NCBI GenBank assembly: GCA_976226885.1
Contig: OZ320319.1
Span: 29,884,001 to 29,948,000 of the forward strand
Source of the DNA: Iphione sp. A-MEVVRFRX5
Taxonomy: Eukaryota
Reading direction: 5' to 3'
DNA: 64,000 nucleotides
Shown: piece after piece, positions 4,207-63,237 of the stretch
How the letters are laid out: each line of letters opens with the position of its first letter
Position numbering within the stretch: position 1 is the first letter of the stretch
Position numbers and translations under genes: made by a program
Notes under the pieces: model-generated
Seen by the model: the letters and a program-made list of their open reading frames with translations, nothing else
What the model was told of the DNA's origin: nothing
Database searches by the model: none

Positions 4207-4362
4207 NNNNNNNNNNNNNNNNNNNNNNNNNNNNNNNNNNNNNNNNNNNNNNNNNNNNNNNNNNNNNNNNNNNNNNNNNNNNNNNNNNNNNNNNNNNNNN
4301 NNNNNNNNNNNNNNNNNNNNNNNNNNNNNNNNNNNNNNNNNNNNNNNNNNNNNNNNNNNNNN
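4207..4362. other. assembly gap (156 N)
   Basis: Run of N bases. Confidence 1.
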
Positions 4363-31700: not shown

Positions 31701-34700
31701 TCTGTGCGAATGTGTACAAGGGGTATTTTGTCCAATGAGTAATGCTGAGTATTTGAGTAATCTTTGTGAATAAATGCCAATATTGTAATTGTTGTATATA
31801 CATGTACACATACATTTGTATATAACTGGGTCTTTTACAGTATGTGCTATTTTTAGGTTATAGATATAAATGTCCGTGTATCAGAGTCTGAATTGGCTAC
31901 AATATGGGCTCCAGTATGGGTTCTACACGATTCCATTAATTCAGATTATGAAAGCGTAGTTGCACAAAGCTTCAGTTTAAATAATCCAGAGAAACATGTC
32001 CTCTTTGTTACATGTTAAGGCGGATACTGACTACTGTCCTCCTCAAATCAGGTTTACTGACTCTCTCGATCCATGCGAATCGCAAGGAAGTAATATTGTC
32101 TGCTTCATTCCCGACACTTCAGACATTACGAGTGAAACATACTCTTATACAAGTGACGCAGAAGCCGAACTAGATTTGCTACTACCCGTGATAGGAGGTA
32201 CGAATTCAATGAGTATCACTCCGAGTCCAAGAAGAAATAGTAGAGCCGAAGCAGCGGCATCGGATGCAATGCCTGTAGGTCAAAGTGATGAGGAAAACGC
32301 TACGGATCTTCTAACTGGTGATGGCGGTCTCACTAACGTTCAGTTGCCCGAACGTTCACGCAGCGATACTCCCGTCTGTAGTACCGGGACGCATGATCAT
32401 GCGCAACATCTACCAGAGATACAGGTGGAGAACGGAGAGGTAAGGGCAATGTCCCCACGCGAGGTCGATGAGGCCAAACATGTTCGTCTTACAGAACGAC
32501 CTGAAAGTACTCCAAGCACTGCAGCCGCAAATGCTGAGAGTCAGGATGGCGTGCATGAGGGCGAGGGAGAGTCGGTGGAGGTCGTCATGGAAACAGAAGC
32601 GAAACGAAGCCAACTGGACTGCAGTAAAGAAATGAATGAACCGGGAGAGCCTGTTTCTACACAGACTCTGGAACCGTCTACGACAGTAAGAAATTGAAGC
32701 TTTCTAATGCCAATGCAGTGCACATACGACTACGAAACGTGTTTCGTTTTCATCACCGGAAGTACCTGTAAATCAATGCATGTCACATTTCTGAGCATCA
32801 AGTCTCTTTGCTATGCTATAGTGGACCTTTCTGATTCTCTTCTCATTTCATATGGAACTTGCTGGTAAACCTTTGTGTTGAGACTCCGTATTCTTCATAT
32901 CATTCAACGCACTGATGCTGCGGATACCTCGCATGACCCCTTCCTAACTTTGTCAAGCTGACGTCTCGATAATAACCTCATATATCTCCGTGTCACAACA
33001 CAAACAGACCTGTGATATCCAACTTCTTTTTCTATGCCTCATAAGATTTCTAAATCTCCTTTTGACAGTGATATACATTTGTTTAAACTACGTACACATC
33101 ACGATAGGCTTATCTTATTTCCTGAGATTTCCTATTATAAAAGGCTTCTTCAGTTTATTGAGCCATGTTTCTCCCGTTGTTCGCGGCTAAACAGCAAAAA
33201 AATGCTTACAGAAAGAGAGAGCCATTTTTAATTACCATTCCATAGGGTTTTAGTAAAAGCCACACAGAGCTGTGTGTTTCTTTAGGGGAAGGTACCATCT
33301 GTGCATTCCATCACGGTTAGGTAGACCCGCTCCTGACATATGAGCTGTGGAAACATTGATGGAATGTTGCTGCACTGAACAAACACATTTACACTTAACC
33401 TACCCTTCTTGCGTCTCACCTGGTATTGCTAAGTGTTATTCCTCTTTAACCTTCTTGGGGACCTTCCTTTTCATTTAAAGATTTCATTTCTTTGAAAATT
33501 AATTACATGGTTACTTATTCTTTCAGTATAAGGGCCGAATAGGGCCATCCTTACCATATTCTGCTATGTAGTAGGTATATCGATGTTTCATTCAGTTCAC
33601 TGTATTGTACAAATGTGTACATAAGTACAAAGGGAGTATTTTCGCTCATATCATTGACAAATGGAGATTTACCTCACACAGGCAATCATAAGCTGTAGAG
33701 ATATCCGCCAGGTCAGAAGGATTACCCTCATAGTGATGACGTTGTCACAACACAAGATGCAGCGTTGACTAGAAGCCTGTTCGCGAATCTGTCACTGATG
33801 TCTGGATGTGTGACTAGCTCTTTGCAAATATTAGCTGGTTATTGTGCTGTATACCGTACACTCAAACCCGAGATCTGCGGTTCAACTGTTCAAGTCCAAC
33901 GGGACTACCCATCAGCACGCCCCTTTCGAAAGGAATCTGAGGTACACTCCTGGAACTATATCAGCCACTGAAACATTGTAATTTTGATGTGTGCATCTCA
34001 GATGCGGGAGACATTTGTTCGCTCTTGCGATCTGAACTTCGAGGGCTGAGGAAATCCCCTTCTCCTTTCTGTTATTGCATTGCGTTGGATCTTATAACTA
34101 CTTTGGGTAGCGTATGTTCGTACGTCATGAATGTAACAGTATAGTTTGATATTCCCTCTAACACCACACTGTAAAGCTAACCATTTTTTTCCTAAAAATA
34201 ATGTCAAGTAATCTACAAAATATTTCGCCAAGACGGAAAGATGCCAAGTGGGTTGGCACTGTACGAAAGAAACGGTCAAATTCAACCTTTGTTACAGAAA
34301 TGAGTGAAATCAAGTATATCATATTTGAAAAGGCCTGTTTCGCTTTATTGCTTACAAACCCATCCCGTTCAGCTTACTTTTCAATCATTCATGGCGTGAA
34401 GACGTTCAATTTTGTGATACACCATTGGTTATCGTTTGTTTTGTGAAATGCATGCAAAGCACGCTATACGTAACTTGCTCACCACAAAACAAATGAGTAT
34501 CTTCGACATTTTCCTGTAGAGTATTGTACAATATCTGCAGTAGAAAAATAGCTAAAAGTTGAAAGTAGTTAAAACAAAAAATATATGTCAGGTACATCAT
34601 AAGGTAGTCACAGTGCATCAAATATGGACATGAGGAAGGGCAGATGTCACCAATATATGAATCGTAAACTTGTGTGTGAAGAGAAGGTAGTGTGTAGTAC

Positions 34701-37700
34701 ATCTGGAAGGGATGTTTTAGATGAAATTTATCTTGCCCCCTTTGAATTTAAATGATACGTTCACACTTACTTGTTGCCAACTGATGTTTATAGCCATTGC
34801 AAGTAATAGTTCTCGGTATATTCCTCTTTATGTTAAGAAACCTGGGGTAATAGGCAGTAGTTAGGGACGAGGCAATATTTGCTGTCACACATGATGCATT
34901 GCAGATGAAACGCAATAGAACTCTGAATATTTTTAAAAAATGGTTGGTCATATAATATTAAATGGATGCACTTACATATATATGTATGTGGAGATGTGCG
35001 AACCACATACATCCTGGAGGTTTGGGTGTATGTTGAAGTGCTTCTTGGACGTAACTGACGTTCTCGGTCATATTACTCTCAAATAGACACCCGCCGGCAC
35101 AGAGAAGAAGAAGTATGGCATTGACTCTGTCAACCGAAACTACAAACCGTCCGGCGGCAATGTGAAGATAGTGGAGAAGAAAGTGGACGTAAAAAATGTC
35201 GGGGCACGAATTAACAACAAACCATCACCAAAGAATCCAGACGGCACCCCGATCACTCGTAAGTGTCATTTTTAGCATGCGGTTCTGAAGACTACACTGA
35301 AACTCTTGTAGTTACCTTTATTGTTTATCGTCAAGTCTAATGCGTCCATGTACCCCTTGTTCTAATATAATTTGGTAGTCACCTTTGCATCACGCACATA
35401 CTTATTTCTTTGGGAAGTCTTGCTTGCTAGTTGAGTAAGATACTCTGAGATCATCTCTCTAAAATGTTTGGTTAAGCTTTTGTACGTATATGAACCTTCC
35501 AGACTCACATAATATGTCGTTCTAAGTAAAGCTTGCTTTGAGACATGTTGTAAGACTGTGCGTCTTTTTATTGTCAGGGCCAGGAGCATACACACCCGAA
35601 ACACGTTAGTGTCTTTACATTATATTTTTATGGCTAGTAGATATCTGGTCAGTTATGTGATAAGCCACTTCAAACCGTTTTAGAACTCTCATACAGGGAA
35701 TCGAAAATTGACCTGGTTCTTCATATTTGTAGCACATTTTATGACTGTTGGTGCACGATACTTGCCCAGATATCCCTTTATGCCTTTATATTTTTTTGAC
35801 AAGTAAGTTTAAATCCAATAACAAAATATAAACAGAAGACTTTCCTATTTTCCATTGATATTTCTTTGCTTAAAATCACCAGTATATAGTACCAACCTAG
35901 TTTGCTGGCCACTATGGACTGTAGGGAAATGAAAGAGAACCCTCTTGATCTTCAATTTTATTTATGTTGTGGCTTGATTGGACTCTCACATTCAGACACT
36001 CTGTTTAAAGTGAAAAATAGCCTGAATTTTGGTGAAACCAAACATATTTATGATCTCCCATCGACAGTCAGAGGCATTTTTAGGTCAGAGGACCAATCTA
36101 AAAGAGTAGTAACAGAGTACTCTTTCACCTAGGTGTTATACATTGTCCTTTGCTGCGACCTGTAAGGGCCCCCCCCCCCAAAATAGGTGTGTTTCTGTGA
36201 CCCACCCCTACCTAGTAAAACCTCACCCTACCTAAAAAGAGTTTCTGAGGCTGAATTTGCTTAGATATGTGTTTTCATGGTGCATATTTTTGGTAAATTC
36301 AGTAGAAAAACAAAATCCATGAAAATACATCAAAAAACTGTAAAACTCATGCAAATTGGTCAAACATCTTCATATTGTCTTTATTATTATGGAAAACCAC
36401 AGGAACAAGGAAAACTACATTTAAAAAAAAAAAGATACCCCCCCGCTCCCTACCTAGGTTTTTGGTTGGTTGTTACCAGAAACACATCTATTTTTTTTGC
36501 CTAATCTTTGAATTCGATAGTTAAATTCCCCTGAACTAGCCATTTCCCCATTATTAGATATACCTTACAGTTCATTACATACGGTTTAACATCACTGGGT
36601 CCTACAGTATGAAACGCAATACCAAAAATGTATGTAGGCAATAGTAGGTAAGTACGTTAATTCCAGTCAAAACAGAGAATCCACTTAACCCTTAGCTTGG
36701 AATGCCTGGTATCCAGTTGAATTGGTTGCTACTGTATACTCTTCCATCCATGAAATGAACAACAATCCTTCTCCTCACTGTAAAACTGAGTTAGATCTCA
36801 AGGTTGGTTGTGTTTCCTTGTCAACTGACATTGAGATCATAATGGTGTCTGTCCATGTTGTAAGAAGACCTGTGCACAAAGGCCATACTTGCATGACATG
36901 ATAGAAATTCTCTTTTGTATAGTCTACAGTGTACATGCATTCAAATAAAGAATATTTTGCTTTTTTACACAACCCTACTAATTGCTTAATATGAAGTGCG
37001 GTGGTGAAGAAATAAAATGCGTATGTTATCTAGAATTAACATATTCATCTGCGATATAGAGACCCTAAAATGGAAATAGCTTATGCAAGAAATGATAATC
37101 AGATACGTGTAGTATGTCGTGTTGTTTGCCCTGACACATTAATCAATGAAGTCTAAACGAATCTTTTCTCTCATGTGTATAACAATTACTCTGTCCTGCT
37201 TGTGTAGCTAAAAGCAAAAAGATAACAGAAACGATCAAGACAATGACTCCCTCACCCAACACGAAGCAGGCGGCTTCCAAGATTGGGTCCTTAGCAAATG
37301 CTGCGCATACACCTGGCGGTGGACAAGTAAGTCATTACTGCAGTTAAAAGAAGACACTTTAGTGATTTGGTGTTACTGGTAATTACAGAAAATAATATAG
37401 CTATTTATTTCACTCGTGCATTGTGATATTTTGCACATTATAGTATACCTTACGTTTTGATCATTATTGCACTACTGGCTGATCATAGAAAATGAAATAT
37501 TTTATATACATCACATCAAGTTATGTAAAGGCTAGTGAGGTATTGCTGTCATAGTACATAACTTGCTGATCGGATGCATTAAAATCCGTTAATTTTATCG
37601 TAGGTTCGCATTGTGTCCAAGAAGGAGGACTTCAGTACTGTGACCAGTAAGTGTGGCTCTGTGGCTAACATCAAACACACGCCAGGAGGTGGCACCAAAA

Positions 37701-40700
37701 AGGTAATTTGGACCTACTCTTTTAAAACATTAGGTATTTCACTGTAACATAAAGAATGCCATGAGAGCTATTATCCTCAACAGTGTTAACCTGGCGCTAT
37801 GCCTGCATGGAGTTGAAAACAGTGAGGCGTATCTGTTTGGCTCACCCATCGTATATATATATATATATATAACCAAACAAACGTACATCGTTATATCACT
37901 CATTCAACAAAATTTGACATTCCCCATGTCCTCTTATTGTTAATGAAACATCATAAGCCGTAATATTTTTGGGGGGCTAACGTTTGTTTTATTATGAACT
38001 TGCACGTACTTCATTCTATTGTTTACAAGATCAGGCCAGTTATTAAACATATCAGGACTTTTGCCATAGCTTGCGTGTGCACTTCACCTAAGCCTCATAC
38101 TAAACAGTGTCTCTGTGCACTAAATCGTGTCTCCGTACATAACCCATTGAGGTCTTACGTCCAAAGATCGTGGAGGCATTGGATTAGATATAGCAAAACT
38201 AGTTCGAAAGCTCATAAACCCTTCGAAAGCTTTCTTTAACTTAATGAAATCTATAAAGAAAACATTTTCCCCTCCCCACTAATGTTAACAGATAGAAAGT
38301 CACAAGCTAGAATGGAATGTGGGTTCGCGAATAGGGTCGCTGGAGAAAGCAGACCATAAACCAGGAGGTGGCACTAAAAAGGTATCATCCGCTCCTATCT
38401 CCATACTTGTATACAGTGTTATACCATGTATTAGCCCTCCGTTAGCCCTTTCACGCTAGTACAATGCATTGTGCGGTATTTGTTTTCCTCTGGCAAATAC
38501 ACATGTCATAGCTTGACAAAAGTCCCAGAGTAGCGACTGTTTCTTTCTTTGGCACATCTAGCAGTATAGGACGGAATTTATAACATTCTCACCACGGTAC
38601 TACATTATTTAAAAGAACGACATTCAGTCATACTCAGCACATTTTCCAAGGTCAGACATGTACGTTCAGCGTATTTTTTCCCAGTAGAAATCTGCTTCCA
38701 TACAAGACCGCCTTCTTTAATACGCACAAAACATCGTAAGAATCATAAGTCAGATTACTTTGTACTTCCGTCATGAGCCTACTGCTATTTGTACACACAA
38801 CAGTCACAAAGACCTTTGTCTTGATTTAGTCCAAAAGTGTTTCTCCTGTAATTGTGTTGTATCTTTTTTTATCCTTGTACATAACCTTCCAATGGTACTT
38901 TCACTTGAAAATGTTTGATACATGGGACACATTTTTCTCTATTATATCTCTAGTAGATATCGCTTTTTAAGGATGGTACCGATTCTCACCATGAAGTCCT
39001 CCAGTTTTTCCATTTTTACCATCTTTCCTTGTAGTGGAAAGTCTTCCATTACAAATGCACATATACCTTCATGCATATATATACATATATATCATCTATA
39101 TCCATGCATGGAAATTCTCTTTCTGCTTGGAATCGATTTCTGAGTAGTACCAGTCGTGAAAAAAAACTCGTTTAAAAAACAGCGTAGCATGAATCGGCGA
39201 ACACTGCCCTCTTGTGTTATCCAGTGGAACTAGACCAGTACACACCTTGACCACGTGAAACACGCAGCAGAGCCATGCACGGAATGGTGAACCTCAGCAC
39301 TCAGTAAACCTGGTTTACACTCCGCTCCCAAATGCATAAGCTATTATTTCCATGTGAGCGTGTTTCTCGCCAGTTTTTTTTTTCAAAACTCGCTGACACG
39401 GACGTGAAATACGTGCACATAGAATTCCATCTTACGATCAGCTTCAGACCCTTCTAAAGGAATCTTTTCCACTGTGTTGAACTTTCTTAGCAAATGCCAA
39501 ACTGGATCTGCTTCCCTCTGTCAGTCTTCTTAGCTATGGATGATTTCTTGTTCTGTGGATAATCCAAGTTGTAAATGGTTTTTGAAGCATCTGACCAGGT
39601 AATGGAGAGCTGAATAAATTGTTGCTAGCTGGGCTTTGCTGCTGATAGTTACCCCTTTTCAGTATTTGTCACTGTTAAATAGTTTGCCTCATGTTTATTA
39701 AGGCGTTACTCCTAGTTAACCTTACGTGCACATACGGATGTATGGAAAAAGGAATATTTGTGCGCGATCGAATTCACGCTAATATGTAGTCTATAATGCA
39801 AAGAGATACATTCCAATCTTATCCTCTCCATAATAACAATGACACATTTAAAATAATGTAAATTTGATTATGCACATTATTAATAAGTTGAATATATAAT
39901 GTGCAAACCATCCCAGAAAATTCATGCTTTTACCAATCTTTTTGCATGTACTCCATAGAATTGACCTAAAAGCAAGGCATGAATTTGTTTTGCTGTTTCA
40001 TCCACATGCAAATGTGATCCCCACTCATCTCTCTTTCTTTATCCAGATGAATTGTTTCAAACGCTATTCAATTCGTTTTGCCAATGAAAATAGGACACAT
40101 GCTCTTTTAATTTTTTCCCAAAATGTGAAGTAAAAAGGAAGATATTTATCTGGAAAGTCGGCAATTAATCACAACCTGTCGGGGATTTATAACTTAATGT
40201 ATAGAGGAAAATCATAGAGAGTTCTGTATTCTTTTGAAATAATGAATAAGGTAAACAATAACTTATCGCTGACTAATTTACGACTTTCATTTCTATATCT
40301 TCTCTGCACTTATTCATGTAGATTGAAAGCCAGAAATTGTCTTGGAATGTCCAATCGAAAGTGGGTTCTCTAGACAACGCCAAACATTCACCCGGCGGTG
40401 GAGAGAAGAAGGTAACAGTTATTGGTTTATTTGTTAGTGTATATCCGAGAGATATACATGTGTTGTATTTCTATGACTTCATCCACTGTTTGCCATCTGT
40501 GAAAATGTGAAACATCGTTACCTTTATACATGTTACACACATCTCTGTATTTTGTTCTTATAGAAACGAGGAAAACGAGCAATTTTGAAGAGTTCTGCGT
40601 AATTATGTGTTTTTAAATGAACCATTCTATTTTTATTTCTAGAGGGCTTCCCAGCAGGAAGGTTATTAATGGCCAATCCGATCACTTGGTCATTCAACCT

Positions 40701-43700
40701 TCTACCTTCTTATTGTTTTAGGAGTCGTCATACAACATTTTTTTTATCAAAGGTTCCAAATAGGACAGGTGCAGATGCTTTTGTTCATGCAGTTTGTTCA
40801 ATCCTATTGCATCATGGCATGGGGATTTAGCTCAGTTGGTAAGAGTGCTGACTAGCACTGGTCCACTGTTGAGAGGTCACAGGTTTAATCCTAGGCCAGG
40901 GATTCCAGATAATGATCAGGCTGATATTACTGTAGCAACAACCCACAATGGTCCAAACTTAAACAAAGGCCCTTTGTGTATAGGATTCTGTGCCCTATAT
41001 ACAAAAATACCCCAAAAACCTGTTCAAAATAAGAGTAGGGACAACTCTACCTATTCTGGTCTCTCACTTTTCAACAATAGATGGTAGTATGCTACTCCAG
41101 GAGAACACGTAAGAACAGCTAAAATGATAGTGAAATACCTATTTCCTGGGTAAAGGTACAATGGAAGTGAAAATAAAATTGTACATAAAGGTCCTATGTT
41201 TGGCTGGGGTGAGACTATCTAGTAGAGATTTCTGAATTTTGTGTGATAGTGAAGGAAACCTCCTCCTAAAACGACTTCCCTGCTAGTAGATACTTTCACG
41301 ATATTGCCATGCACTTAATCGAGTATTTTTAACATGGTTAGACAACTAAATTCAAAAGATAAGATTTTCAGTTTGAAAAAAAAATCAAGAGTTTACAACA
41401 CATTTGTTTCACATGAATTATTTAGGTTTCTATCTGTTGGAAAAAGAGGGAATTTATTGACATTGGTGATATGAAATATCATACCTAAGTATGTACTTTA
41501 TGAACTTTGTTTATTTACATATATTCCCATTACTCATTTGTGTAGATTGAAAACCAACATTTGGCTTGGAATGCCAAATCGAAAATTGGTTCTCTAGATA
41601 ATGCTAAGCATAAAGCTGCCGGTGGACAAAAGAAGGTAACAGATATTACTCTTTTTAACATATGTTAGATACAGTGTGTGAAACTATCATGTCCATCCAC
41701 ATCGTACACCAAGGTGACTATTTGTGTGGTCCATAGTAATACAATGGTCTTTATTCTTTTTAGAAAGATGACACATAATGAATGGAGGCAAAACAGCTAA
41801 TGTATTTGTGACGATTATGTTGGCACTCCATGTAAACTTTGAGTTAAAAAAACGAAATGAAATTCCACGATCTTTTGGCCTGCTGTTCTTATTCATGTCA
41901 TTTTATGAGGCCAGATCACCCAGCACAAGACGCGATGGAAGGCCAGCTCCAAGGTTGGCTCATTGCAGAAGGCCGGTCACCTCCCGGGGGGAGGGGACAA
42001 GAAGGTACCATACCAGTGCCTGCAGCCTCTTACAATTGCTTTCCCAAGTATTAACGTTGAATTTCCAGAATCCGTCCCCTGCAAAGCCAAGACCTAGACC
42101 CTTGCCAGCGAGTGTTTCTAGGCCTTTTTTTCTCTCACAAACATCCTGTCGCATTATCACTACCCCGTTCAGAATGAATCTTTTTGAGAGCAGGCTTCCA
42201 CCTTTTATGTTAGAAAGTCCGAATAAGCAGGATAGTTATAAAGAAACGCACACAGCTGGTAACAGACATTTAAATCTAAGGCTCTTCAAGTTGAATGCTA
42301 CTAATTGACATAATTGCAACGGTGAGGGCATCGCAACACTCTAATTATGCAACTGGTGACTCTACTTTGTGGTCCGTATCTCCAGTTGGTTAGTATCATC
42401 TAATTATCCTTAATGGTAACAGAGCAACTCTTTTGAGCAAGGCGACATAATCTATCAAACCATCTGTGCTGATAAAAGGATCTGTTGAATAGGCCAGAAA
42501 TCTGCAACTGTTGTCTAGATATTGCAGTATTGTAACACGCCATATTTGATGATGATAGATATAGAGATCACGGTCAGGGATATGTCATTATCCCCTTGTA
42601 ATTTTCCCAAATGTGAATTTCGGTGTTTAAATACTAATGGTCTTTTCGTAGTCACCGTCCTTTCTCTTTTGAAAGCATTGGTGTACAAACCTACTAAACT
42701 TGTTCAGTTTAGCGTGTACCCTCTGTATTGAAGTTTGTTTTCAACACTGACACTCCTTGTTCGAATGCACACATCACTATGTTCAGCATTGACACCGATG
42801 TTCTTTGTGTCATCCACATTTTTGTTGCAACGTCGTGAGAGAGAACGTAGTAGTCAACTGGCTATGAAGAAAGTTATTTACACTTGTGGTTTCTAGGCAA
42901 TTGCCTTCGTGGTCAGCAAAAGATTGAAGCACAAGAAATTATCACCATGTACTCATAAGATTGAAGAGATATTTACTCTACAAGTGACTTTAACTTTGAT
43001 TGTGTAACGAACTCCGGACAGGAACACATAGATACATCTGGCTTATATTCATCAATCTTGGTTTGGTGACGGCGCCCCCTCCCCCACTTTGCCCTCCAGC
43101 ATGCCCTTTCGTGGTGTTATAATTGAGCAGTTTGATATCGTTTTAAATGGTTTGACTGACCGTCTCACCTCTTGTTTTTCTTTCTAATTCTCGAATCCGG
43201 TCCTTATCCGTCTTAAAATTAACATCGCTTTTCTGGTATTTTGTTCTCTTTGTCGATAATCTAGATTGAATCCCATAAAGTGACCTGGAAGGCCCAATCA
43301 AAAATCGGCTCTCTTGATAATGCAACGCATACACCGGGAGGCGGAGAAAAGAAGGTAATCTGTACGGGGCTCTCTAAAAAGCTAAACCATGTAAAGCTCG
43401 TAAAAAAGACAACGGCAAAATTGTATGTAGTGTCAGCTCCCAACTTTCTGTTATATTCCAGGATGATGACACGTGAACTGAAACCACTCAATTTTCATTC
43501 AGATGCTGACGATGTCACCAGCACTATGTTTCGAGAATTGAATTGTACTGAATGTTCATATTTAAAACAGGTCAAATTGAAATTAATCGAAAGGTACAAA
43601 AAGAAAAAAAAATACTGACTTCTGTAGTAAATAACATTATTAATTCAATCTTAACTTTATCTAACCTGATTAATCCACTCAGTACCAGAAAAATAGTTAA

Positions 43701-46700
43701 GTAATTTTGTGGTCAAACAATGAAAGAACGGCAGGATCAAACAGAGATATGTAAGCATTGAACAAAAACAGCAACAAACTCAGTGAAAAAAACTTTCCGA
43801 CATGTTTTTGCGCTTTACTTCGCAGGTCAGGCCGAAGAAAAGAAAATATGGTGCTTCGTATTTGTATTAAATATGCATCAACATAATGCTTTGTAGAACG
43901 GAAAGGAAATGTTCGTCTAATATGGTCTTATTTGTCAATCACCCACCTGCAGATTGAATCTCAGAAGTTGGCTTGGAATGTCCAGTCGAAAATCGGCTCA
44001 CTTGATAATGCAGCACACGTGGCAGGCGGTGGAGAGAAGAAGGTGTGATACTTTGTCAGTGTATAAAAGTGCATCTTATTCTAAAATTGACTGATTTCTG
44101 GAAGGAACAAGTTGTTGTCATTTTGTAGGTGCACTGTGAAGGAAATGAGAGTTCGTTACTGCTTCTTTCTCTTTGCAAACAGGAGCACGGATTGTGCTTC
44201 TCCATCCTCAAGCTTTTGCTATCTACTAATAGTAAGCTTATTTAGAGCAATATTTTTTGGGACCATGTGTAAGAATAAAAGTAAGAAATAAGATGATTGT
44301 AGGATAAGGGCTGTCCCCAAAGTATACTGACGTAATGAAAAGATTGTTAATTTCATGAAGCCTAATTATTTTGAGTTATTTTTATTCCTAGATCGAAAGC
44401 CACAAACTGAAATTCAGGGAGAAGGCTCAGGCTAAGGTCGGCTCGACAAAAAACATGACCCATCAGCCTGGTGGTGGAGAAAAGAAGGTAAGCAGAATGT
44501 TTTACATTATTTCAAAGTCTCATGCTCGTTCGCATTACGCTGTTAACACATGGCGTTGAAGACATAGTAAAAGGAGAGATAGAGAGAAGGTCACAATATG
44601 AGCGGTTTGATCCGTGTTGATTCATGATGAGAATGAGACAAATACAAAAGAACAAAATTTTCCATGAAACAAATGGAAAAGGGAAATTTGGAGTAGGTAT
44701 GTGTACCGCCAAACCCTAATTTTTATGCTGGGTCTCCATCTCCATCTGTGCATGTCTGGAAAATCAGCCGATTTTCTGGAAAAGCACAGAATCCAGAAAA
44801 AACCTGCACACATGGAAAGTAGGTCCAAGGCTAAATACCAAGGGCTCACACATCCAATGTGTTGTATTTCACATTTAAACCATGCCCCCACGAATTTGCA
44901 CTGGAGGCCTGACTACAGGTAACCTTTACTCGTCCATGCCTAAACAGCTGACGCTATGACAAGCAGTAAGACTAATGGTTCCATTTTATGTGAAAGTACA
45001 TTGTACGTGTCCGGGACAGGGCGTCCGACTATAGATGTACCCGAAACCACACATAGAGGTAGTAGAATAGGGACGTGTACTGGAAGGTGGAAATTTCAAA
45101 ATTTTTCTCATGATCAGTTTTCATAAGTGCTTCTCTGCTAACATTAAAAAATTATGAAAGTCATTTTTTGACATACTGCCCACGGACTAAATGCCCCCAG
45201 ATTCATGTGTAATTCTCTTTGATGCATATGTAATATAACATGCAGTATGTTTCTTCAACCAACGCCTTGAATCTAGAATGAGTCATTTTCCCTTGGGCTT
45301 TCGAACATGGAAATTTGAAGATATTTAATGCAATAAAAACAAGGTCCTTGCCTTCTGAAGATAGACAACTTCAGATATGTTGGTCATCAAAGTCAGAGTC
45401 TTGTTCGTGTTTCCAGCCTGTAATAATTGTAAATTTTACACATGCATCTACAGTAAATACTCAAAACTGACAAGCCTTGGTTCGAAGTAAAAGTGTCCAC
45501 ATTAAGGAGATCCCTCCAGTTTTTGATAATAAGTACTATGAATAGCAAAAGTATGATGCCGTTCTGGCCAAAGTTCCCCCATTCTAGCTATGTGCCCCAG
45601 TCGCAGGTTGGCTCAGTAAAGTTGCTCTACTGAATTCACACTGACGTTTTCCAACAGGTAATGACAGGTATTCTCAATTTGCTGGAGAGTGTTATATCCT
45701 GAGACGTTCTACTTATTTTCTTTCGGAACATTCAGTTTGCCTTTCCCGTCTTTATATACTTTCATTTTTTTACCCGGTGAAATGAACTAAATATAGATGT
45801 TCCTTTTGGATTTAATCATTCTTTTTATATACACGATTATGTGAACAGAGGTCCCTTTAAACCGCCAGGCGCTGATATAGGTGGTATTAAGGTGTTTAAT
45901 CCTAGTGGATACGACAAATCTGCATTAAATCACAGTTGGACATGGATTGATGCCAAGTTAATTTGAGTAAAGTGTCACCGTGAATAATCTGCTGCATGAG
46001 AACTTAGACCACAACTGAACTCTCGTCAATACGATTCTCACAATTAACAAGAATAGGCGTAGAAAAGACAAAACTACCCTTACCCAAACGCTATGTGGTA
46101 ATGAATTTTCAGGTATATTTCATAGGCAGGTTCAATGAACTACGGTCGATTCCTTTAGTTGGGTAATGTACATCATCCCAGTCGTCTATACGAGATTATT
46201 TTCCTTGGCTCTTAAGAGGCTTTTCTACACACATGGGCGTCATGTGTATTTTCCAACCTGTGCCAGCCTCATGGACGTGACCGCAGGAAAATTAAGCCTG
46301 TCAACACAGTTTGTAGCAACTGACCATATTTGGCACGAGGATCAGAGATTGTTCTTCGAGTTTACTACACCTAAGGATAGACAGACACTCAAGTTGACGT
46401 ACGTCTATCCGCCTGTTGGATTTAAACCACGCTCCACTTGATCACCCAGGAATAGATTTGACGATGCGTAGCTTCACATCGTGCCCAACCTTTATTCACT
46501 TGGCACCAAACCCTTTGCAGGTGTACGATAGACGGTATCGAATCTGGACAGTTTACTCAAACTGAACGAATCTTTCAAGCGCGTTACACACCTGTAACAA
46601 GTGCTGGAAAGGATCATTGATCACGGGCAGTTCGTGTATTGACATCGATAAAAACATAACGACATGTACATTTGTCAACTGTGATGAAAACGTTTTGGCA

Positions 46701-61700: not shown

Positions 61701-63237
61701 ATAAAATGGTCGCATAGAATTTATAAGGTATTTCATTTTGTAACTTGTAGTTTAGCCATATGTTTCAGGACATGTTCCCGCTTATGAAAACAAAAACAAA
61801 AAACATGTTAGGTATAAGGATAAAAGCTGAACTCAAGTTCCTTTGGCTGTTTTCCATATACATTGTACATGTACATGTCAACGTGCACATTGAGATATAT
61901 CTGTTATATCTAGAACAACCCAAGACTATATACTTTGTATCAGGTTTCTACTAATGTCTCTATAGATATCGCACATGTGTCCTTAGCTTTGAAGGCTATC
62001 CAGATTGGATGGATTGTCCCGCTTACAGATCCGTGAAAGCCATAGATTTAAACCAACCTGGACATTTAGTGGTTATCTGATAGTCAACCGGGGTCAATTA
62101 GTGTCATGCAAATCCATCTGTTCCAGACTAAATGGATATGTCTCTGTGTGCATGATAATGTATACAATGGAACACCGCCCTAATATCTTGCTACTTGGAT
62201 GCCATAGACCCTGTTTATCATTATGAGTTTAACTGTGATGAAGAAACGTCGGACTTGCAACATATGAGCAACAATGCTACCTTCAAGAGAAGAGGGTAGA
62301 CTGGCCTTTTTCTCAGCGACCAGCGAGGAGTTTAGTTTCTCTCAGGCATGCCCGTTACACCTACATTTACTTTAAAGGTTGTGAGGCGCTTTAGTATAAC
62401 TAGTATTCACATAGTATATCATTGTGCCTATATTTCCTCATAAATTATTGAACAGACAAGTCTGCGTCAAATAGAAACGGTTTTAGAATGCACGTGTAGG
62501 TGCTGCTTCAGTTTTGATTTAAAAGATGTCACAGATGGACAAATATTTGAGCCCTGATTTCTATACCTTGTCCTTTAACCGTTCTCTAGCTGGGGTGCGT
62601 CAAGTTGTGGACTATGGGGCTTATGACCTCTTGAACATATTTTTTCCAGCATACACTCGTTCTTTATGGTTAATCTGTGCCCTCCTCCCCACCTCCCCGG
62701 TGTAATTAGGCGGTCTTTCCATGTGTACAACTTTTTGTGATGTGGGGTTGGAGTGTAGGAAGTCCTAACACCCCGCCAGTGGTGACACTGCGGAACATAC
62801 ATTGTATGTACATATGGACAGGGTGCGGGTAGATTTACGCGTGTACTGATCCGCACTGTCCTGCACGATCCTGCAGATGAATCCATAGTTGTCTGGTAGG
62901 TTCATCTATCAGTTCATTATTTGGTTTCACCTACGGTCCTTGCTCCGCGTCCGGAGCTGGAGAAATCGTGCACATGGAAAGACAGCCTAGCCGACCTGGA
63001 TCAACCCTGCACTGCCATGCCAGCAACTCAACTTCAGTTGAATGTACAGTAGTTCTGCAGTCTTCAATTAACTGGTCATTTTGTCATATTTTCCAGATTG
63101 AGAGCCACAAGCTGCACTTCCGTGAGAAGGCCCAAGCCCGGACGAATCATGGAACTCGCACTACCGGCTCTGACTCGATCGGCTCCGGGGAGGCTGCCGA
63201 GTCCATCAGCTCGGCAGACGGGGCAGCAAGCACATGA
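21717..63237 (+). CDS. MAPT: tau/MAP2/MAP4-family microtubule-associated protein (host gene, multi-exon; 5' end unresolved)
   Basis: 13 exons with AG/GT boundaries and matching phases total 2204 nt, which with the 1 nt from the upstream exon gives 735 codons including the stop. The product has nine K/R-x-G-S...(P)GGG repeats and a terminal [19 protein letters not shown] matching vertebrate tau IETHKLTFRENAKAKTDHG. The symbol denotes family membership, not one-to-one orthology. Confidence 0.9.
24171..24214 (+). CDS. MAPT: host tau 44-nt linker exon (D)[14 protein letters not shown] (phase 1-0)
   Basis: Acceptor TTTTCTTTCACCAG|, donor CAAG|GTAAGG. It bridges the phase-1 donor at 22709 to the downstream phase-0 acceptors. 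Confidence 0.75.
28966..29214 (+). CDS. candidate alternative exon of the tau host ([22 protein letters not shown]...), boundaries uncertain
   Basis: C-rich acceptor ...CCCGCATGCAG| in phase 0; 37 of the first 47 codons end in G/C; phase-0 donor GGACAG|GTGCGA at 29215. It could instead start at ATG 28960 or run to TGA 29280. Confidence 0.4.
31245..31511 (+). CDS. candidate alternative first coding exon, Lys/Arg-rich ([15 protein letters not shown]...TKPRR)
   Basis: ACAATGG start and a strongly basic reading frame; phase-0 donor CGG|GTAAGA at 31512 is compatible with the phase-0 acceptors at 32020 and 35087. Confidence 0.45.
32020..32685 (+). CDS. candidate alternative acidic exon of the tau host (phase 0-0, 666 nt)
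   Basis: 233-codon open frame, D/E/S/T-rich and disorder-like. Acceptor TCCTCTTTGTTACATGTTAAG|, phase-0 donor ACA|GTAAGA at 32686. It could also initiate at ATG 31996. Confidence 0.6.
35087..35258 (+). CDS. MAPT: host tau 'pre-repeat' exon [57 protein letters not shown] (phase 0-1)
   Basis: Acceptor TTACTCTCAAATAG|, perfect donor |GTAAGT at 35259, and a tau-like [10 protein letters not shown] motif. Confidence 0.85.
36166..36501. mobile_element. PIF/Harbinger (Tourist-like) MITE, 336 bp, copy 1
   Basis: TIRs ...AAAATAGGTGTGTTTCTG / CAGAAACACATCTATTTTTTTTGCC with a TAA target duplication at 36163-65 and 36502-04. Collinear with 60817-61152. Confidence 0.85.
37208..37326 (+). CDS. MAPT: host tau R1-like exon (P)[39 protein letters not shown] (phase 1-0)
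   Basis: Acceptor TCTGTCCTGCTTGTGTAG|, donor CAA|GTAAGT; canonical SKIGS..N..H.PGGG. Confidence 0.92.
37604..37702 (+). CDS. MAPT: host tau R2-like exon [33 protein letters not shown] (99 nt, phase 0-0)
   Basis: Acceptor TTTTATCGTAG|, donor AAG|GTAATT; aligns with human [30 protein letters not shown]. Confidence 0.93.
38292..38381 (+). CDS. MAPT: host tau 90-nt repeat exon 1: [30 protein letters not shown]
   Basis: AACAG| acceptor, AAG|GTATCA donor, phase 0-0. Confidence 0.9.
40322..40411 (+). CDS. MAPT: host tau 90-nt repeat exon 2: [30 protein letters not shown]
   Basis: TTCATGTAG| acceptor, AAG|GTAACA donor, phase 0-0. Confidence 0.92.
40821..41116 (+). mobile_element. tRNA-headed SINE-like repeat (not a functional tRNA)
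   Basis: Head GGGGATTTAGCTCAGTTGGTAAGAG contains an A-box; degenerate B-box GGTTTAATCC; the body is shared with 12564-12806 on the opposite strand. No intact acceptor stem seen. Confidence 0.7.
41546..41635 (+). CDS. MAPT: host tau 90-nt repeat exon 3: [30 protein letters not shown]
   Basis: TTTGTGTAG| acceptor, AAG|GTAACA donor, phase 0-0. Confidence 0.9.
41915..42004 (+). CDS. MAPT: host tau 90-nt repeat exon 4: [30 protein letters not shown]
   Basis: GCCAG| acceptor (weak pyrimidine tract), AAG|GTACCA donor, phase 0-0; the most divergent of the six. Confidence 0.82.
43265..43354 (+). CDS. MAPT: host tau 90-nt repeat exon 5: [30 protein letters not shown]
   Basis: AATCTAG| acceptor, AAG|GTAATC donor, phase 0-0. 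Confidence 0.92.
43953..44042 (+). CDS. MAPT: host tau 90-nt repeat exon 6: [30 protein letters not shown]
   Basis: CCCACCTGCAG| acceptor, AAG|GTGTGA donor, phase 0-0. Confidence 0.9.
44392..44487 (+). CDS. MAPT: host tau 96-nt repeat exon: [32 protein letters not shown]
   Basis: TTTTTATTCCTAG| acceptor, AAG|GTAAGC donor, phase 0-0. Confidence 0.92.
47846..47851 (+). promoter_or_regulatory. candidate TATA box for nested ORF-A
   Basis: TATAAA about 50 nt upstream of the CAAAATG start at 47897. Motif only. Confidence 0.3.
47897..51187 (+). CDS. nested intronless ORF-A: about 36 tandem tau-like repeats (1096 aa from ATG 47897)
   Basis: Uninterrupted 3.3-kb frame. Short acidic N-terminus, then an R1-like [28 protein letters not shown], then 35 Trp-anchored 28-30-aa units. 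Nine units carry KxGS. In-frame stop upstream at 47852-54. Confidence 0.88.
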   Translation: MSERVASALSLDEFEEDDDEDDQFDYLRRKSWPRPPDYKHVRARIGSLKDASRPRPGGNVKIVNRRLSWSNQSKVGSLDNLQHRPGGGDKPIENHVLAWRSEPRIDAFNPDYVPRGGDIYVLDEKPRWKAEAAVDARNDGYRPSGGNVAIYDETPKWRAGPKVESVNPTYQRKGGSVSIIDEKPKWKAQPKVETLNVSYAPKGGNVVIADQKLHWRAEQKVDSNNHVYKPGGGNVEIINEKPKWKALPKIESRTTHEPKGGNIEIFSETPRWKALPKIDTGSTDYKPKGGGVQIFNEKQMWKAAPKIDAGDKNYQPKGGDVKIFEETPRWNAAPKVDAGDRNYKPKKQEVQIFNESINWKASPRIDVGDPNYKPRGGHVEIFTETPRWNAAPKVDAGDRNYKPKKQEVQIFNESINWKASPRIDVGDPNYKPRGGNVEIFTETPKWKAAPKVDAANRTYNPRGGDVQIFTETPKWKVNPKIDVDNKNYKPGGGDVKIFTEAAKWNAAPKIDVGSKDYQPKKGDVRIFSEAPKWEATPRIDAGSKDYTPRGGDVKIFTEAPKWNAAPKIDIGNADYQPKKADVKIFSETPKWQANPKIDVGNNDYTPRGGDVKIFTEKLGWQASPRIDAGDKNYEPKRGTVQIFSEKPKWEASPRVDAGDKQYEPRRSEVKIFSKTPKWEASPRTDHGDKSYKPGGGEVKIFSEKPKWTATPRIDNHADYKPPESEVKIFSENPKWNAPAKIHFGEDSYQPQGGKVEIFDERPNWKKEAKIGSLDNISHVPAGGNRKVESQKLNWQASSKIGSLDNIHHVSQGGNIEIANEKLDWKKQSKINSFENLNRKPPGGMKSIESHRLSWNKASKIGSTLDKKYKSRGGNVEIKSEPVHWNAKSKVGSLLNVKWVPPGGEKSIKSQKLKWKKQSNVGSTVDPNYKPRGGNVKITSEKLTWKVSAKVGSLENVSWVPTSSRRTIESTKLNWKAAPKIDTILEPSKIPTERKVHIPSQQVQWKKESKVGSLDNVKWNPPVSKVKIHNQKPHWDKQSKIGSLDNVLHNPGGGDVILPKNAVNWRKQSKLGSTRSGEYMPGYKKLKGSLCPEWHRR
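48871..49218 (+). repeat. near-identical 174-bp (two-repeat, 58-codon) tandem duplication inside ORF-A
   Basis: 48871-49044 and 49045-49218 differ at only a few positions (e.g. TAT/TAC, CCC/CCT, CAT/AAT). Confidence 0.92.
51150..51800 (+). pseudogene. frameshifted, decayed tau-like repeats downstream of ORF-A
   Basis: Fragments in shifting frames: [83 protein letters not shown] (51676-51759) and [10 protein letters not shown]. Confidence 0.65.
54598..57816 (+). CDS. nested intronless ORF-B: acidic N-terminal domain plus about 10 tau-like repeats in three clusters (1072 aa)
   Basis: GCCATGG Kozak start with an in-frame TGA 6 nt upstream. Repeats such as [32 protein letters not shown] and [16 protein letters not shown] fall at about 56044-56350, 56540-56775 and 57540-57765. 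Confidence 0.88.
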   Translation: MEEDSVSVSLEPIPLSSLGPNLSGHKMSEESAGNEEDRDSDVKSMSFQAEDVDTTPEGHIDAESTNTLTDSLPGESTAPALDTGVFADQNKDNNSPIEISSAALDPPMEIQEVVCSDGVHGSPVPISSKVINSSTDMAQDVPQECLHEDADDGLLHGKEESPVVIPEDANSTTTTETVTANMDDTGGARETGGISKGDHQTEEAHVACPNNSGDEENSVCLNLERKDDLLELEPESKQDQGSEGNLNGFNLRKAVALENLSDNESDLESESNSNVDDSIDDLLPPLDNETPNDTTTVKDTESNPGQAENNNVSADEVQSSIEPTERTVNTEIQNDNQVLTDGGDMQEGSDSSDEPEFECESFRHLNSLLKDEEDTNEYFAAGAHVDPNYLGDACEIPMVIDYKPQFGEGPLLGDSRYSPDGLARKPVRSLRTDNDKLANRSTPESNLTVHAQQYNKPKVNPLVNGSSKLKMNSLLTADKNLDKHEEAKPGSLENLEHLPTKSNKKIFNSLPKWKKQSKIASLENIGHEPPQSKVKIFDQPISWSAQSRLGSLDNLSHVPGGGHVELPRQEVKWRSEPKVGSLETLRKMKDIERSLPEKMDSIAEEDEVHLGDSSNDQRSGGPYNVNVPKYVLNKRNRTKKPLRFVGVFHERLNWKGQAKVGSLDNIHYKPGGGDVIVEEEEENQKVEAKSTVGSLDNIDHVPGGGTVQLPRNKVNWNKKSKVGSLRSMFEINEDKKVVLQKFGINWDAFPEHLRPRREACDIDIQTSSGLRKSEQSVVSKTDIDDRAVFNPVDQWFKDYKQKRVSRREMFKAIDKELEDSVRFSSHSKHLGLGDARISGRRNRKVRPLRAEGGPDEQTLSRYTRPETPVVERSDVQVQGHGSPELAKNLRGSDTTSTVPSEPSTIEPPSLHSITEEKPDLAVSGLKAPYLVRAKMDGGDSTQAVGNDLVTMPSKRAKTHTKLVPVEMPEAARDQLGLDSAKKKPKAKIRSIGNTDIIPGINDHLRINNEKLRWKAKPKVGSLDNVNHSPGGGFKAVYNEGLSWNAESKVDAGSGPRVVREGTYDVIKTSPEK
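58214..58219 (+). terminator. candidate polyadenylation signal for ORF-B
   Basis: AATAAA about 400 nt after the stop, followed by T-rich sequence. Motif only. Confidence 0.3.
59450..60410 (-). mobile_element. degenerate 5'-truncated non-LTR retrotransposon (CR1/L2-like) RT remnant
   Basis: Minus-strand fragments in shifting frames: [11 protein letters not shown] (~60340-60365), [30 protein letters not shown] and [14 protein letters not shown]. Confidence 0.8.
60817..61152. mobile_element. PIF/Harbinger (Tourist-like) MITE, 336 bp, copy 2
   Basis: TIRs GGCAAAAAAAATAGGTGTGTTTCTGGTAA / TTACCAGAAACACCTATGTTTTTGGCC with a TTA target duplication at 60814-16 and 61153-55. Homologous to 36166-36501. 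Confidence 0.85.
63097..63237 (+). CDS. MAPT: host tau terminal exon [46 protein letters not shown]
   Basis: Acceptor TTGTCATATTTTCCAG| in phase 0; the N-terminal part matches vertebrate MAPT exon 13 (IETHKLTFRENAKAKTDHG). Confidence 0.9.
   Translation: MESHKLHFREKAQARTNHGTRTTGSDSIGSGEAAESISSADGAAST

What the first reader, a model, noticed from the sequence alone, without database searches (positions are those of the whole stretch)
37604..44487. Host repeat domain built from an array of symmetric one-repeat exons
Seen: eight consecutive phase 0-0 exons (99, six of 90, 96 nt), each encoding one repeat and each ending in KK|GT. With the R1 exon this gives nine repeats, and any subset can be skipped without a frameshift (up to 256 combinations in principle). 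Established: human tau switches between 3R and 4R with one cassette, exon 10. Inference: tandem exon duplication created a tunable repeat number. Most of these exons are absent from the ORF track in their true frame.
Basis: partly seen in the sequence, partly recalled or inferred. Interest (0 to 1): 0.7.

Follow-up and report, generated by a model that had tools for sequence, protein, structure and literature searches.

The report
Tau-family gene with one-repeat exons
This is the microtubule-gripping end of the animal's only tau/MAP2/MAP4-type gene, built from nine repeats that each sit in their own exon. Six of those exons can probably be left out one by one to set how many repeats the protein has, as gene models already show for molluscs, brachiopods, echinoderms and a sea squirt.

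Summary
Eight consecutive phase 0-0 exons of 99, 6x90 and 96 nt lie at 37604-44487. Each has AG/GT borders, ends in KK|gt, and encodes one PF00418 tau repeat. With the R1 exon (37208-37326) that makes nine repeats.

- **Exon duplication holds but is old.** E3, E4, E6 and E7 keep 50-70% third-codon-position identity (dS 0.6-1.7, dN/dS 0.10-0.35). E2 and E5 are saturated, and introns no longer align.
- **Skipping could not be tested here.** No RNA run was listed for this genome.
- **Relatives support skipping.** Annotated or assembled isoforms of the orthologue in 13 species of four phyla differ by exact whole repeats of 30-32 aa. In lophotrochozoans the skipped units are almost all the "W-type" repeat, which matches E2-E7. 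The counterparts of R1, E1 and E8 are kept, apart from forms with another C-terminus.
- **The likely range is narrower than claimed.** I expect 3R to 9R, at most 64 forms, not 256. E2-E7 also have weaker donor sites.

Repeat expansion in molluscs is published. I found no paper on the isoform ladders. This is a new member of a known kind, of modest interest. The scan has separate notes on the nested ORFs in this window.

The parts
35087..35258 (+). 'Pre-repeat' exon (..[21 protein letters not shown]..) upstream of R1, belonging to the same gene
   Evidence: tblastn hits from about 47 relatives at E <= 1e-3. Best matches are scallop, mussel and argonaut proteins. AG acceptor and gtaagt donor.
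37208..37326 (+). E0, the R1 repeat exon (119 nt, phase 1 to 0), ends PGGGQ|gtaagt
   Evidence: PF00418 E=2.3e-5.
37604..37702 (+). E1, 99 nt, phase 0-0. KCGS-type (R2/R3-like) repeat [33 protein letters not shown]. Probably constitutive.
   Evidence: PF00418 E=1.9e-12. Its counterpart is kept in all Haliotis, Lingula and Littorina isoforms. Donor matches the consensus at 7/9.
38292..38381 (+). E2, 90 nt, phase 0-0, W-type repeat. Old copy, candidate cassette.
   Evidence: Third-position identity to the other exons is 0.27-0.37. Donor 5/9.
40322..40411 (+). E3, 90 nt, W-type repeat, member of the younger E3/E4/E6/E7 group. Candidate cassette.
   Evidence: PF00418 E=1.9e-12.
41546..41635 (+). 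E4, 90 nt, W-type repeat (AAGG in place of PGGG). Closest copy of E3. Candidate cassette.
   Evidence: 78% DNA identity to E3, dS 0.57. Similarity reaches only about 14 nt into the introns.
41915..42004 (+). E5, 90 nt, the most divergent W-type repeat ([15 protein letters not shown]..). GC3 is 0.83 and the pyrimidine tract is weak. The least certain exon.
   Evidence: PF00418 E=1.2e-4, still over the cut-off.
43265..43354 (+). E6, 90 nt, W-type repeat, candidate cassette
43953..44042 (+). E7, 90 nt, W-type repeat, donor AAG|gtgtga. Candidate cassette.
44392..44487 (+). E8, 96 nt, F-type last repeat ([25 protein letters not shown]). Probably constitutive.
   Evidence: Its counterpart is the last repeat in molluscs, Lingula, Tubulanus and arthropods. 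It is kept in the isoforms with the usual C-terminus. Donor 7/9.
63097..63237 (+). Last coding exon: pseudo-repeat R' ([19 protein letters not shown]..), C-terminus and stop codon
   Evidence: ORF 62968-63237. Acceptor ttttccag|ATT in phase 0. tblastn hits from 20 relatives. The tail resembles the Haliotis ..ETAKARTKHG.. tail.
40815..41010 (+). Dispersed repeat with a tRNA-like head (SINE-like) inside the E3-E4 intron. Not part of the coding array.
   Evidence: More than 2,000 first-look candidates in the genome; the 39 scored copies elsewhere are 79-83% identical. ARAGORN calls no tRNA gene.

Best explanation
The stretch is the microtubule-binding domain of the genome's single tau/MAP2/MAP4-family gene. 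Other agents' notes say the genome is an annelid; I did not test that.

**Layout (shown).** The coding order is: pre-repeat exon, R1 (E0), a KCGS-type repeat (E1), six 'W-type' repeats of exactly 30 aa (E2-E7), an 'F-type' last repeat (E8), then, 18.6 kb downstream, the pseudo-repeat and C-terminus.

**Origin (shown).** The six W-type exons arose by old tandem duplications of one exon bounded by phase-0 introns at the KK|IE junction. All copies have since been kept under purifying selection.

**Mechanism (inferred).** Every exon from E1 to E8 ends in KK, and every exon from E2 to the last begins with I-E/T. Leaving out any W-type exon therefore restores the same KK|IE junction and removes exactly one binding unit. 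I infer that E2-E7 are cassette exons and that R1, E1 and E8 are constitutive. That would give a graded series from 3 to 9 repeats. The repeat count would set how long a stretch of protofilament one molecule covers and how tightly it binds.

**Not shown.** That the exons are actually skipped in this animal, and that skipping is regulated.
For: **Identity and copy number**
- All nine exons match PF00418 above cut-off. All 19 matches the genome search reported (a lower bound) lie in this window, so I take it as the only locus.
- A profile of the nine exons finds 1,817 tau-family proteins. In solved human tau chains its best stretch is residues 340-370, the region I recall as R4. The hits include microtubule-bound tau entries 6cvj and 6cvn.

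**Exon anatomy**
- Lengths, phases and KK|gt ends.

**Duplication and selection**
- DNA identity among E3, E4, E6 and E7 is 72-78%. Third-position identity is 0.50-0.70, against 0.20-0.37 for E2 and E5.
- dN/dS is 0.10-0.35.
- There are no decayed copies in the introns.

**Skipping in orthologues**
- Haliotis rufescens has ten isoforms of 1619 to 1469 aa in 30-aa steps, with 5 down to 0 W-type units.
- H. rubra, Littorina, Gigantopelta, Pecten, Mizuhopecten, Mercenaria, Mya and Lingula show 30/60/90-aa deletions of whole units.
- Clavelina (31 aa) and Patiria (32 aa) do the same.
- Holothuria has 626-aa and 596-aa forms on separate 2-5 kb assembled contigs. Contigs that short holding the whole ORF are most simply transcripts.

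**Lineage-specific copy number**
- The W-type unit count runs from 1 in Strigamia and Hyalella to 3-5 in Tubulanus, Argonauta and Haliotis. Several lineages carry near-identical within-species copies.

**Splice sites**
- Donor match to CAG|GTAAGT is 8, 7 and 7 of 9 for E0, E1 and E8. It is 5-6 of 9 for all six W-type exons.
- That is complete separation. By my own count the one-sided exact rank probability is 1/84. The sample is small.
Against: - There is no transcript evidence from this organism. No RNA run was listed and no same-species or annelid protein turned up.
- The RefSeq isoforms of relatives are computed models. Their combinations may be assembled from local junction reads rather than full-length molecules.
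- All eight exons have canonical splice sites and look selected, which fits constitutive inclusion equally well.
- E5 is odd: GC3 0.83, a weak pyrimidine tract, and diverged IESxKL and LDNA motifs. It may be used rarely or not at all.
- In the tunicate Clavelina, one isoform skips the second repeat, which I take to correspond to E1. So E1 may not be constitutive here.
Confidence: 0.62

Rival explanations
1. All eight exons are constitutive. The animal simply makes a fixed nine-repeat protein, and the symmetric exon structure is a historical by-product of exon duplication.
For: Every exon has an intact frame and AG/GT borders, and shows purifying selection. No skipped transcript has been seen for this species. 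Proteins with many repeats (10-13) exist in other invertebrates (PMC8985376).
Against: The orthologues in 13 species of four phyla are annotated or assembled with whole-repeat skipping, mostly of this exon type. The six W-type exons have weaker donors than E0, E1 and E8.
Confidence: 0.22
2. Only part of the array is in use. E5, and possibly another copy, is a decaying or cryptic exon that is never or hardly ever spliced in.
For: E5 has GC3 0.83 against 0.30-0.61 for the others, a pyrimidine tract of only 0.58, and donor gtacca. It has lost the IESxKL and SLDNA motifs and has the weakest PF00418 score, E=1.2e-4. It lies only 279 nt behind E4.
Against: The frame, AG/GT, KVGS, H and PGGG..KK are all intact. 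Synonymous sites are saturated, yet first and second codon positions are still 67-72% identical to the other exons. That is not expected of an unselected copy of that age.
Confidence: 0.12
3. The duplicated exons are used in a mutually exclusive way, one of the array per transcript, as in many tandemly duplicated exon arrays. They would swap repeat flavour rather than repeat number.
For: From general knowledge, tandem exon duplicates are often spliced mutually exclusively. One Lingula isoform (X4) carries a different unit in place of an eight-repeat block.
Against: In Haliotis, Littorina, Gigantopelta, Mercenaria and the scallops, the W-type units occur together in any number from 0 up to 5 in one model. 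Symmetric exons need no exclusivity to keep the frame.
Confidence: 0.04

Closest known systems
Vertebrate MAPT exon 10 (3R/4R tau) and chicken tau with 3R, 4R and 5R isoforms (Yoshida & Goedert 2002, as cited in PMC7615684)
   Same: Same protein family (PF00418). One repeat sits in one symmetric exon, so repeat number can be set by exon inclusion. The E0/E1 border after PGGGQ, and the KK|IE border before the last exon, lie where I recall the exon 9/10 and 12/13 borders of human MAPT. That recollection was not tested here.
   Different: Vertebrates skip the R2-type repeat, and only one or two exons are involved. Here the expandable module is six R4-like W-type exons, and the R2-like exon (E1) looks constitutive by comparison with lophotrochozoan models. 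Skipping is not shown in this species.
RefSeq isoform ladders of invertebrate tau-like genes, such as Haliotis rufescens LOC124115086 X1-X10, Lingula anatina tau X2-X7, Littorina saxatilis tau-like X7-X9, Mercenaria mercenaria tau-like X1-X9 and Clavelina lepadiformis LOC143466172 X1-X6
   Same: Orthologous domain layout: pre-repeat, R1, second repeat, W-type units ending KK followed by IE, F-type unit, then R'. Isoforms differ by exact 30-aa (31 in Clavelina) units.
   Different: Those are computed models in other phyla with 2-5 W-type units. This gene has six, and the copies were duplicated independently or homogenised within the lineage.
Expanded repeat domains reported at protein level: Crassostrea gigas MAP with 10 binding domains (PMC8985376) and Notothenia coriiceps tau with 7 domains, four of them copies of R2 (PMC4815063)
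   Same: Lineage-specific multiplication of tau-type repeats within one gene.
   Different: Those papers count repeats. Searching PMC8985376 found no mention of splicing. The fish case multiplies the R2 type, not the R4-like type.
C. elegans PTL-1A and PTL-1B
   Same: A single invertebrate tau-family gene with isoforms that differ in repeat content (PMC10738917). From memory the forms have 5 and 4 repeats.
   Different: One optional repeat, not an array of six similar cassettes.

Membership tests
Tau/MAP2/MAP4 family (Pfam PF00418 tubulin-binding repeat proteins) | Tandem 30-32-aa repeats with KxGS and PGGG motifs that match PF00418 above the curated cut-off | tested here: met
   All nine exons are over the 27-bit cut-off, with E from 1.9e-12 to 1.2e-4. 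The profile of the exons retrieves 1,817 family members and human tau chains in the PDB.
Tau/MAP2/MAP4 family (Pfam PF00418 tubulin-binding repeat proteins) | Repeat domain near the C-terminus, followed by the conserved pseudo-repeat IE[ST]HKLxFxExAxA(R/K)TxHG | tested here: met
   The last exon at 63097 encodes [19 protein letters not shown].. and ends 46 aa later. tblastn hits from 20 relatives.
Tau/MAP2/MAP4 family (Pfam PF00418 tubulin-binding repeat proteins) | N-terminal projection domain and a basic, proline-rich region upstream of the repeats | tested here: inconclusive
   Only the pre-repeat exon (35087-35258) and one weak hit at 32068-32406 were found upstream. The N-terminal exons are too diverged to map without transcripts.
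Tau/MAP2/MAP4 family (Pfam PF00418 tubulin-binding repeat proteins) | Binds and stabilises microtubules | not testable with these tools
   Needs expression and a microtubule co-sedimentation or imaging assay.
Cassette-exon repeat-number switch (tau exon 10 type) | One repeat per exon, exon length a multiple of three, same intron phase on both sides | tested here: met
   99, 6x90 and 96 nt, all phase 0-0.
Cassette-exon repeat-number switch (tau exon 10 type) | Transcripts both with and without the exon exist in the organism | not testable with these tools
   No RNA run was listed, so read laying could not be used. In orthologues of 13 other species, whole-unit inclusion and skipping is annotated or assembled.
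Cassette-exon repeat-number switch (tau exon 10 type) | Inclusion is regulated by tissue or developmental stage | not testable with these tools
   Needs tissue- and stage-resolved RNA data.
Mutually exclusive tandem exon arrays | Exactly one exon of the array per mature transcript | tested here: not met
   Tested only in orthologue models. Haliotis, Littorina, Gigantopelta, Mercenaria and scallop isoforms carry from 0 up to 5 W-type units together. Not tested in this species.

The most novel reading that the evidence does not exclude
Invertebrate tau/MAP2/MAP4 genes may share an undescribed 'repeat-number rheostat'. It would be a module of R4-like W-type repeats, one per 90-nt phase-0 exon, whose copy number drifts by exon duplication (1 to 6 copies between lineages) and whose members are skipped independently. 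This annelid gene would be the largest case seen here, with six cassettes. It would give a graded 3R-to-9R series (up to 64 forms) that sets microtubule footprint and affinity by cell type.
Probability: 0.4. Interest if true: 0.45.

Novelty: new member of a known kind. Interest (0 to 1): 0.3.

Why it matters
The ratio of three-repeat to four-repeat tau is central to tau biology and disease, but vertebrates offer only one or two steps of that dial. If the six W-type exons here are true cassettes, this worm and its mollusc and brachiopod relatives offer a natural series from 3 to 9 repeats in one gene. Such a series could be used to ask how repeat number scales microtubule binding, spacing and dynamics. 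It could also show how splicing of near-identical neighbouring exons is controlled. In practical terms, gene models for this locus need care, because short symmetric exons are easily dropped or merged. As it stands, this is an ordinary but well-preserved example of something that database models already show in related phyla.

Tried and rejected
**RNA evidence**
- The look-up of sequencing runs listed no RNA run for 37150-44550 and its single use is spent. Read laying could therefore not be run.

**Relatives' gene structure**
I could not read exon structure in Lingula or Haliotis, so it is inferred from isoform differences only.

**Joined model**
Searches used single exons by reference, or their alignment (A1).

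**Looking for a same-species or annelid protein**
- None appeared among the 150 best profile hits or their cluster members.
- None appeared among the best 120 hits of a word search with the Littorina repeat region, which fish tau isoforms dominate.

- Three Pfam calls failed on my own coordinate or frame slips. The per-exon PF00418 result comes instead.

**Leads that went nowhere**
- Logan fragments in the Haliotis cluster do not reach the repeat region.
- The metagenome-derived clusters P0068 and P0049 are five-repeat proteins of another animal group and show no unit skipping.
- The 176-aa ORF over E5 in another frame is low-complexity and meaningless.
- E5 has no closer DNA relative in the nested ORFs.
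- A recent segmental duplication is rejected, because similarity between units ends about 14 nt outside the exons.
- There are no tRNA genes in the stretch.

**Literature**
- Six full-text searches found no paper that describes repeat-cassette ladders in invertebrate tau genes. That covers the held library only.
Full report
**What is there**

Reading 37000-45000 and locating exons by frame, acceptor and donor gives these exons:

| Exon | Coordinates | Length |
|---|---|---|
| E0 (R1) | 37208-37326 | 119 nt, phase 1 to 0 |
| E1 | 37604-37702 | 99 nt |
| E2 | 38292-38381 | 90 nt |
| E3 | 40322-40411 | 90 nt |
| E4 | 41546-41635 | 90 nt |
| E5 | 41915-42004 | 90 nt |
| E6 | 43265-43354 | 90 nt |
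| E7 | 43953-44042 | 90 nt |
| E8 | 44392-44487 | 96 nt |

- E1 to E8 are all phase 0-0, all have AG|..|GT borders, and all end in Lys-Lys followed by gt.
- Introns between them are 277 to 1940 nt.
- Each exon encodes one repeat of the form I-E-S[27 protein letters not shown] (alignment A1).
- A six-frame search of the whole 1.18-Gb assembly with PF00418 scores all nine exons above the curated cut-off.
- All 19 matches that the genome search reported lie in this window. The tool's counts are lower bounds, but I take this as the genome's only tau-family locus.
- No extra or decayed repeat exons lie in the introns.

**The gene around it**

- Upstream lies a 'pre-repeat' exon at 35087-35258.
- The next coding exon downstream of E8 is at 63097. 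It follows ttttccag in phase 0 and encodes [19 protein letters not shown].. and the C-terminus. This is the family's pseudo-repeat, matched by 20 relatives.
- The 18.6-kb last intron holds two long intron-less ORFs that also carry tau repeats. They are the subject of other notes of this scan and I did not pursue them.
- Other agents' notes call the genome an annelid. I did not test that.

**Kinds of repeat**

I compared the exons with units cut from 14 relatives.
- E1 is the KCGS-type second repeat found in all of them.
- E8 is the 'F-type' last repeat (IETxKLDFKEKAxSKVGS..).
- E2-E7 are one 'W-type' unit (IESxKLxW..SK[IV]GSLDNAxH.PGGG.KK).
- The W-type unit occurs once in the arthropods Strigamia and Hyalella. 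It occurs three to five times in Tubulanus, Argonauta and Haliotis, and six times here.
- In solved structures, the best stretch of the profile of our exons in full-length human tau is residues 340-370, the region I recall as R4. The hits include microtubule-bound tau entries 6cvj and 6cvn.

**History**

- Among the 90-nt exons, E3, E4, E6 and E7 are 72-78% identical in DNA. Third-position identity is 0.50-0.70, with dS 0.57 to 1.7 and dN/dS 0.10-0.35.
- E2 and E5 are saturated at synonymous sites, yet still 67-78% identical at first and second positions.
- So the array grew by exon duplication in at least two phases, and every copy has been kept as coding sequence.
- Similarity between units ends about 14 nt outside the exons, so none of the duplications is recent.
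- Gene conversion limited to the exons cannot be excluded as a contributor.
- Near-identical within-species copies in Haliotis, Argonauta, Nucella and Mizuhopecten show that other lineages expanded the same module on their own.

**Is the repeat number tunable?**

This could not be tested directly.
- No RNA run was listed for this stretch, so no reads could be laid.

The indirect evidence is strong. Cluster look-ups of the best profile hits show isoform ladders in the orthologues. Direct comparison of those sequences shows that the differences are exact whole repeats:

| Species | Difference between isoforms |
|---|---|
| Haliotis rufescens | ten isoforms, 1619 to 1469 aa in 30-aa steps; 5, 4, 3, 2, 1 or 0 W-type units in different combinations |
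| Haliotis rubra, Littorina saxatilis, Gigantopelta aegis | 30 or 60 aa (up to 90 in H. rubra) |
| Pecten maximus | 30/60 aa |
| Mizuhopecten yessoensis | 60/90 aa |
| Mercenaria mercenaria | 30/60/90 aa |
| Mya arenaria | 30 aa |
| Lingula anatina | 30 aa, plus a block of eight repeats |
| Clavelina lepadiformis (tunicate) | 31/62 aa |
| Patiria miniata (starfish) | 32 aa |
| Holothuria (sea cucumber) | 626- and 596-aa forms on separate 2-5 kb assembled contigs |

- Contigs that short holding the whole Holothuria ORF are most simply transcripts. That is my inference.
- In the lophotrochozoans, nearly all skipped units are W-type. Mya arenaria also drops a more degenerate unit.
- The counterparts of R1, E1 and E8 stay in every isoform that has the usual C-terminus.
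- These are mostly computed RefSeq models, so the combinations are not proven molecules.

**Within this window**

One feature fits the same split. Donor sites match CAG|GTAAGT at 8, 7 and 7 of 9 positions for E0, E1 and E8. They match at only 5 or 6 of 9 for all six W-type exons. This is complete separation of 3 against 6. By my own count the chance is 1/84. The sample is small.

**Mechanism I commit to**

- E2-E7 are cassette exons.
- Every exon from E1 to E8 ends in KK, and every exon from E2 to the last starts with I-E/T. Any skip therefore rebuilds the same KK|IE joint and removes exactly one binding unit.
- This gives forms with 3 to 9 repeats, at most 64 combinations rather than 256.
- From established knowledge of tau, more repeats mean tighter binding and stronger promotion of assembly.
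- Whether inclusion is regulated is unknown.
- E5 is the weakest member: GC3 0.83, a poor pyrimidine tract and diverged motifs. It may be used rarely.

**Known or new**

- Repeat expansion in mollusc MAPs is published, with a ten-repeat oyster protein (PMC8985376).
- So are a seven-repeat fish tau (PMC4815063) and chicken 3R/4R/5R tau (PMC7615684).
- The isoform ladders sit in RefSeq.
- Six full-text searches found no paper describing them.
- This locus is therefore a new member of a known kind. The general rule it illustrates seems undescribed in print but is visible in public gene models.

Noticed in passing
window 40815-41010 (intron between E3 and E4): A dispersed repeat with a tRNA-like head (ggggatttagctcagttggtaagag..). 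The genome search gave more than 2,000 first-look candidates. The 39 scored copies on other places are 79-83% identical over about 190 nt. ARAGORN calls no tRNA, so it is probably a tRNA-derived SINE family.
   Followed up: partly
proteins P0218, P0219, P0230, P0271, P0272: PF00418 tau-type repeat proteins are annotated in fungi. They occur in Glomeromycota (Paraglomus, Gigaspora, Rhizophagus) and in Rhizopus, where they are fused to other Pfam domains. They score as well as animal tau against a snail repeat domain. Transfer, contamination or old ancestry were not examined.
   Followed up: no
window 37326/37604 versus all later exon borders: The R1/E1 intron lies right after PGGGQ, while all later introns lie two codons further on, after PGGGxKK. 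This accounts for the 6 extra nt of E1. E8 is 96 nt because its repeat has two extra residues (KFREKAQAK).
   Followed up: partly
window 41778-42308: The neighbourhood of E5 is locally GC-rich and open in all three forward frames across the exon. This gives a meaningless 176-aa ORF in a wrong frame. The cause of the local GC rise is unexplained.
   Followed up: partly
window 4207-4362: A run of 156 N (an assembly gap or masked stretch).
   Followed up: no
window 47861-51187 and 54598-57816: Two long intron-less ORFs in the last intron carry many tau-type repeats (PF00418 E=2e-83 and 3e-49). Together with the host gene they account for every PF00418 match that the genome search reported. Other notes of this scan cover them.
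   Followed up: partly
proteins P0213-P0217, P0220 and cluster 9: Anolis tau isoforms score unusually high against a seven-repeat snail query and come in very many isoforms. Lizards may also have more than four tau repeats.
   Followed up: no
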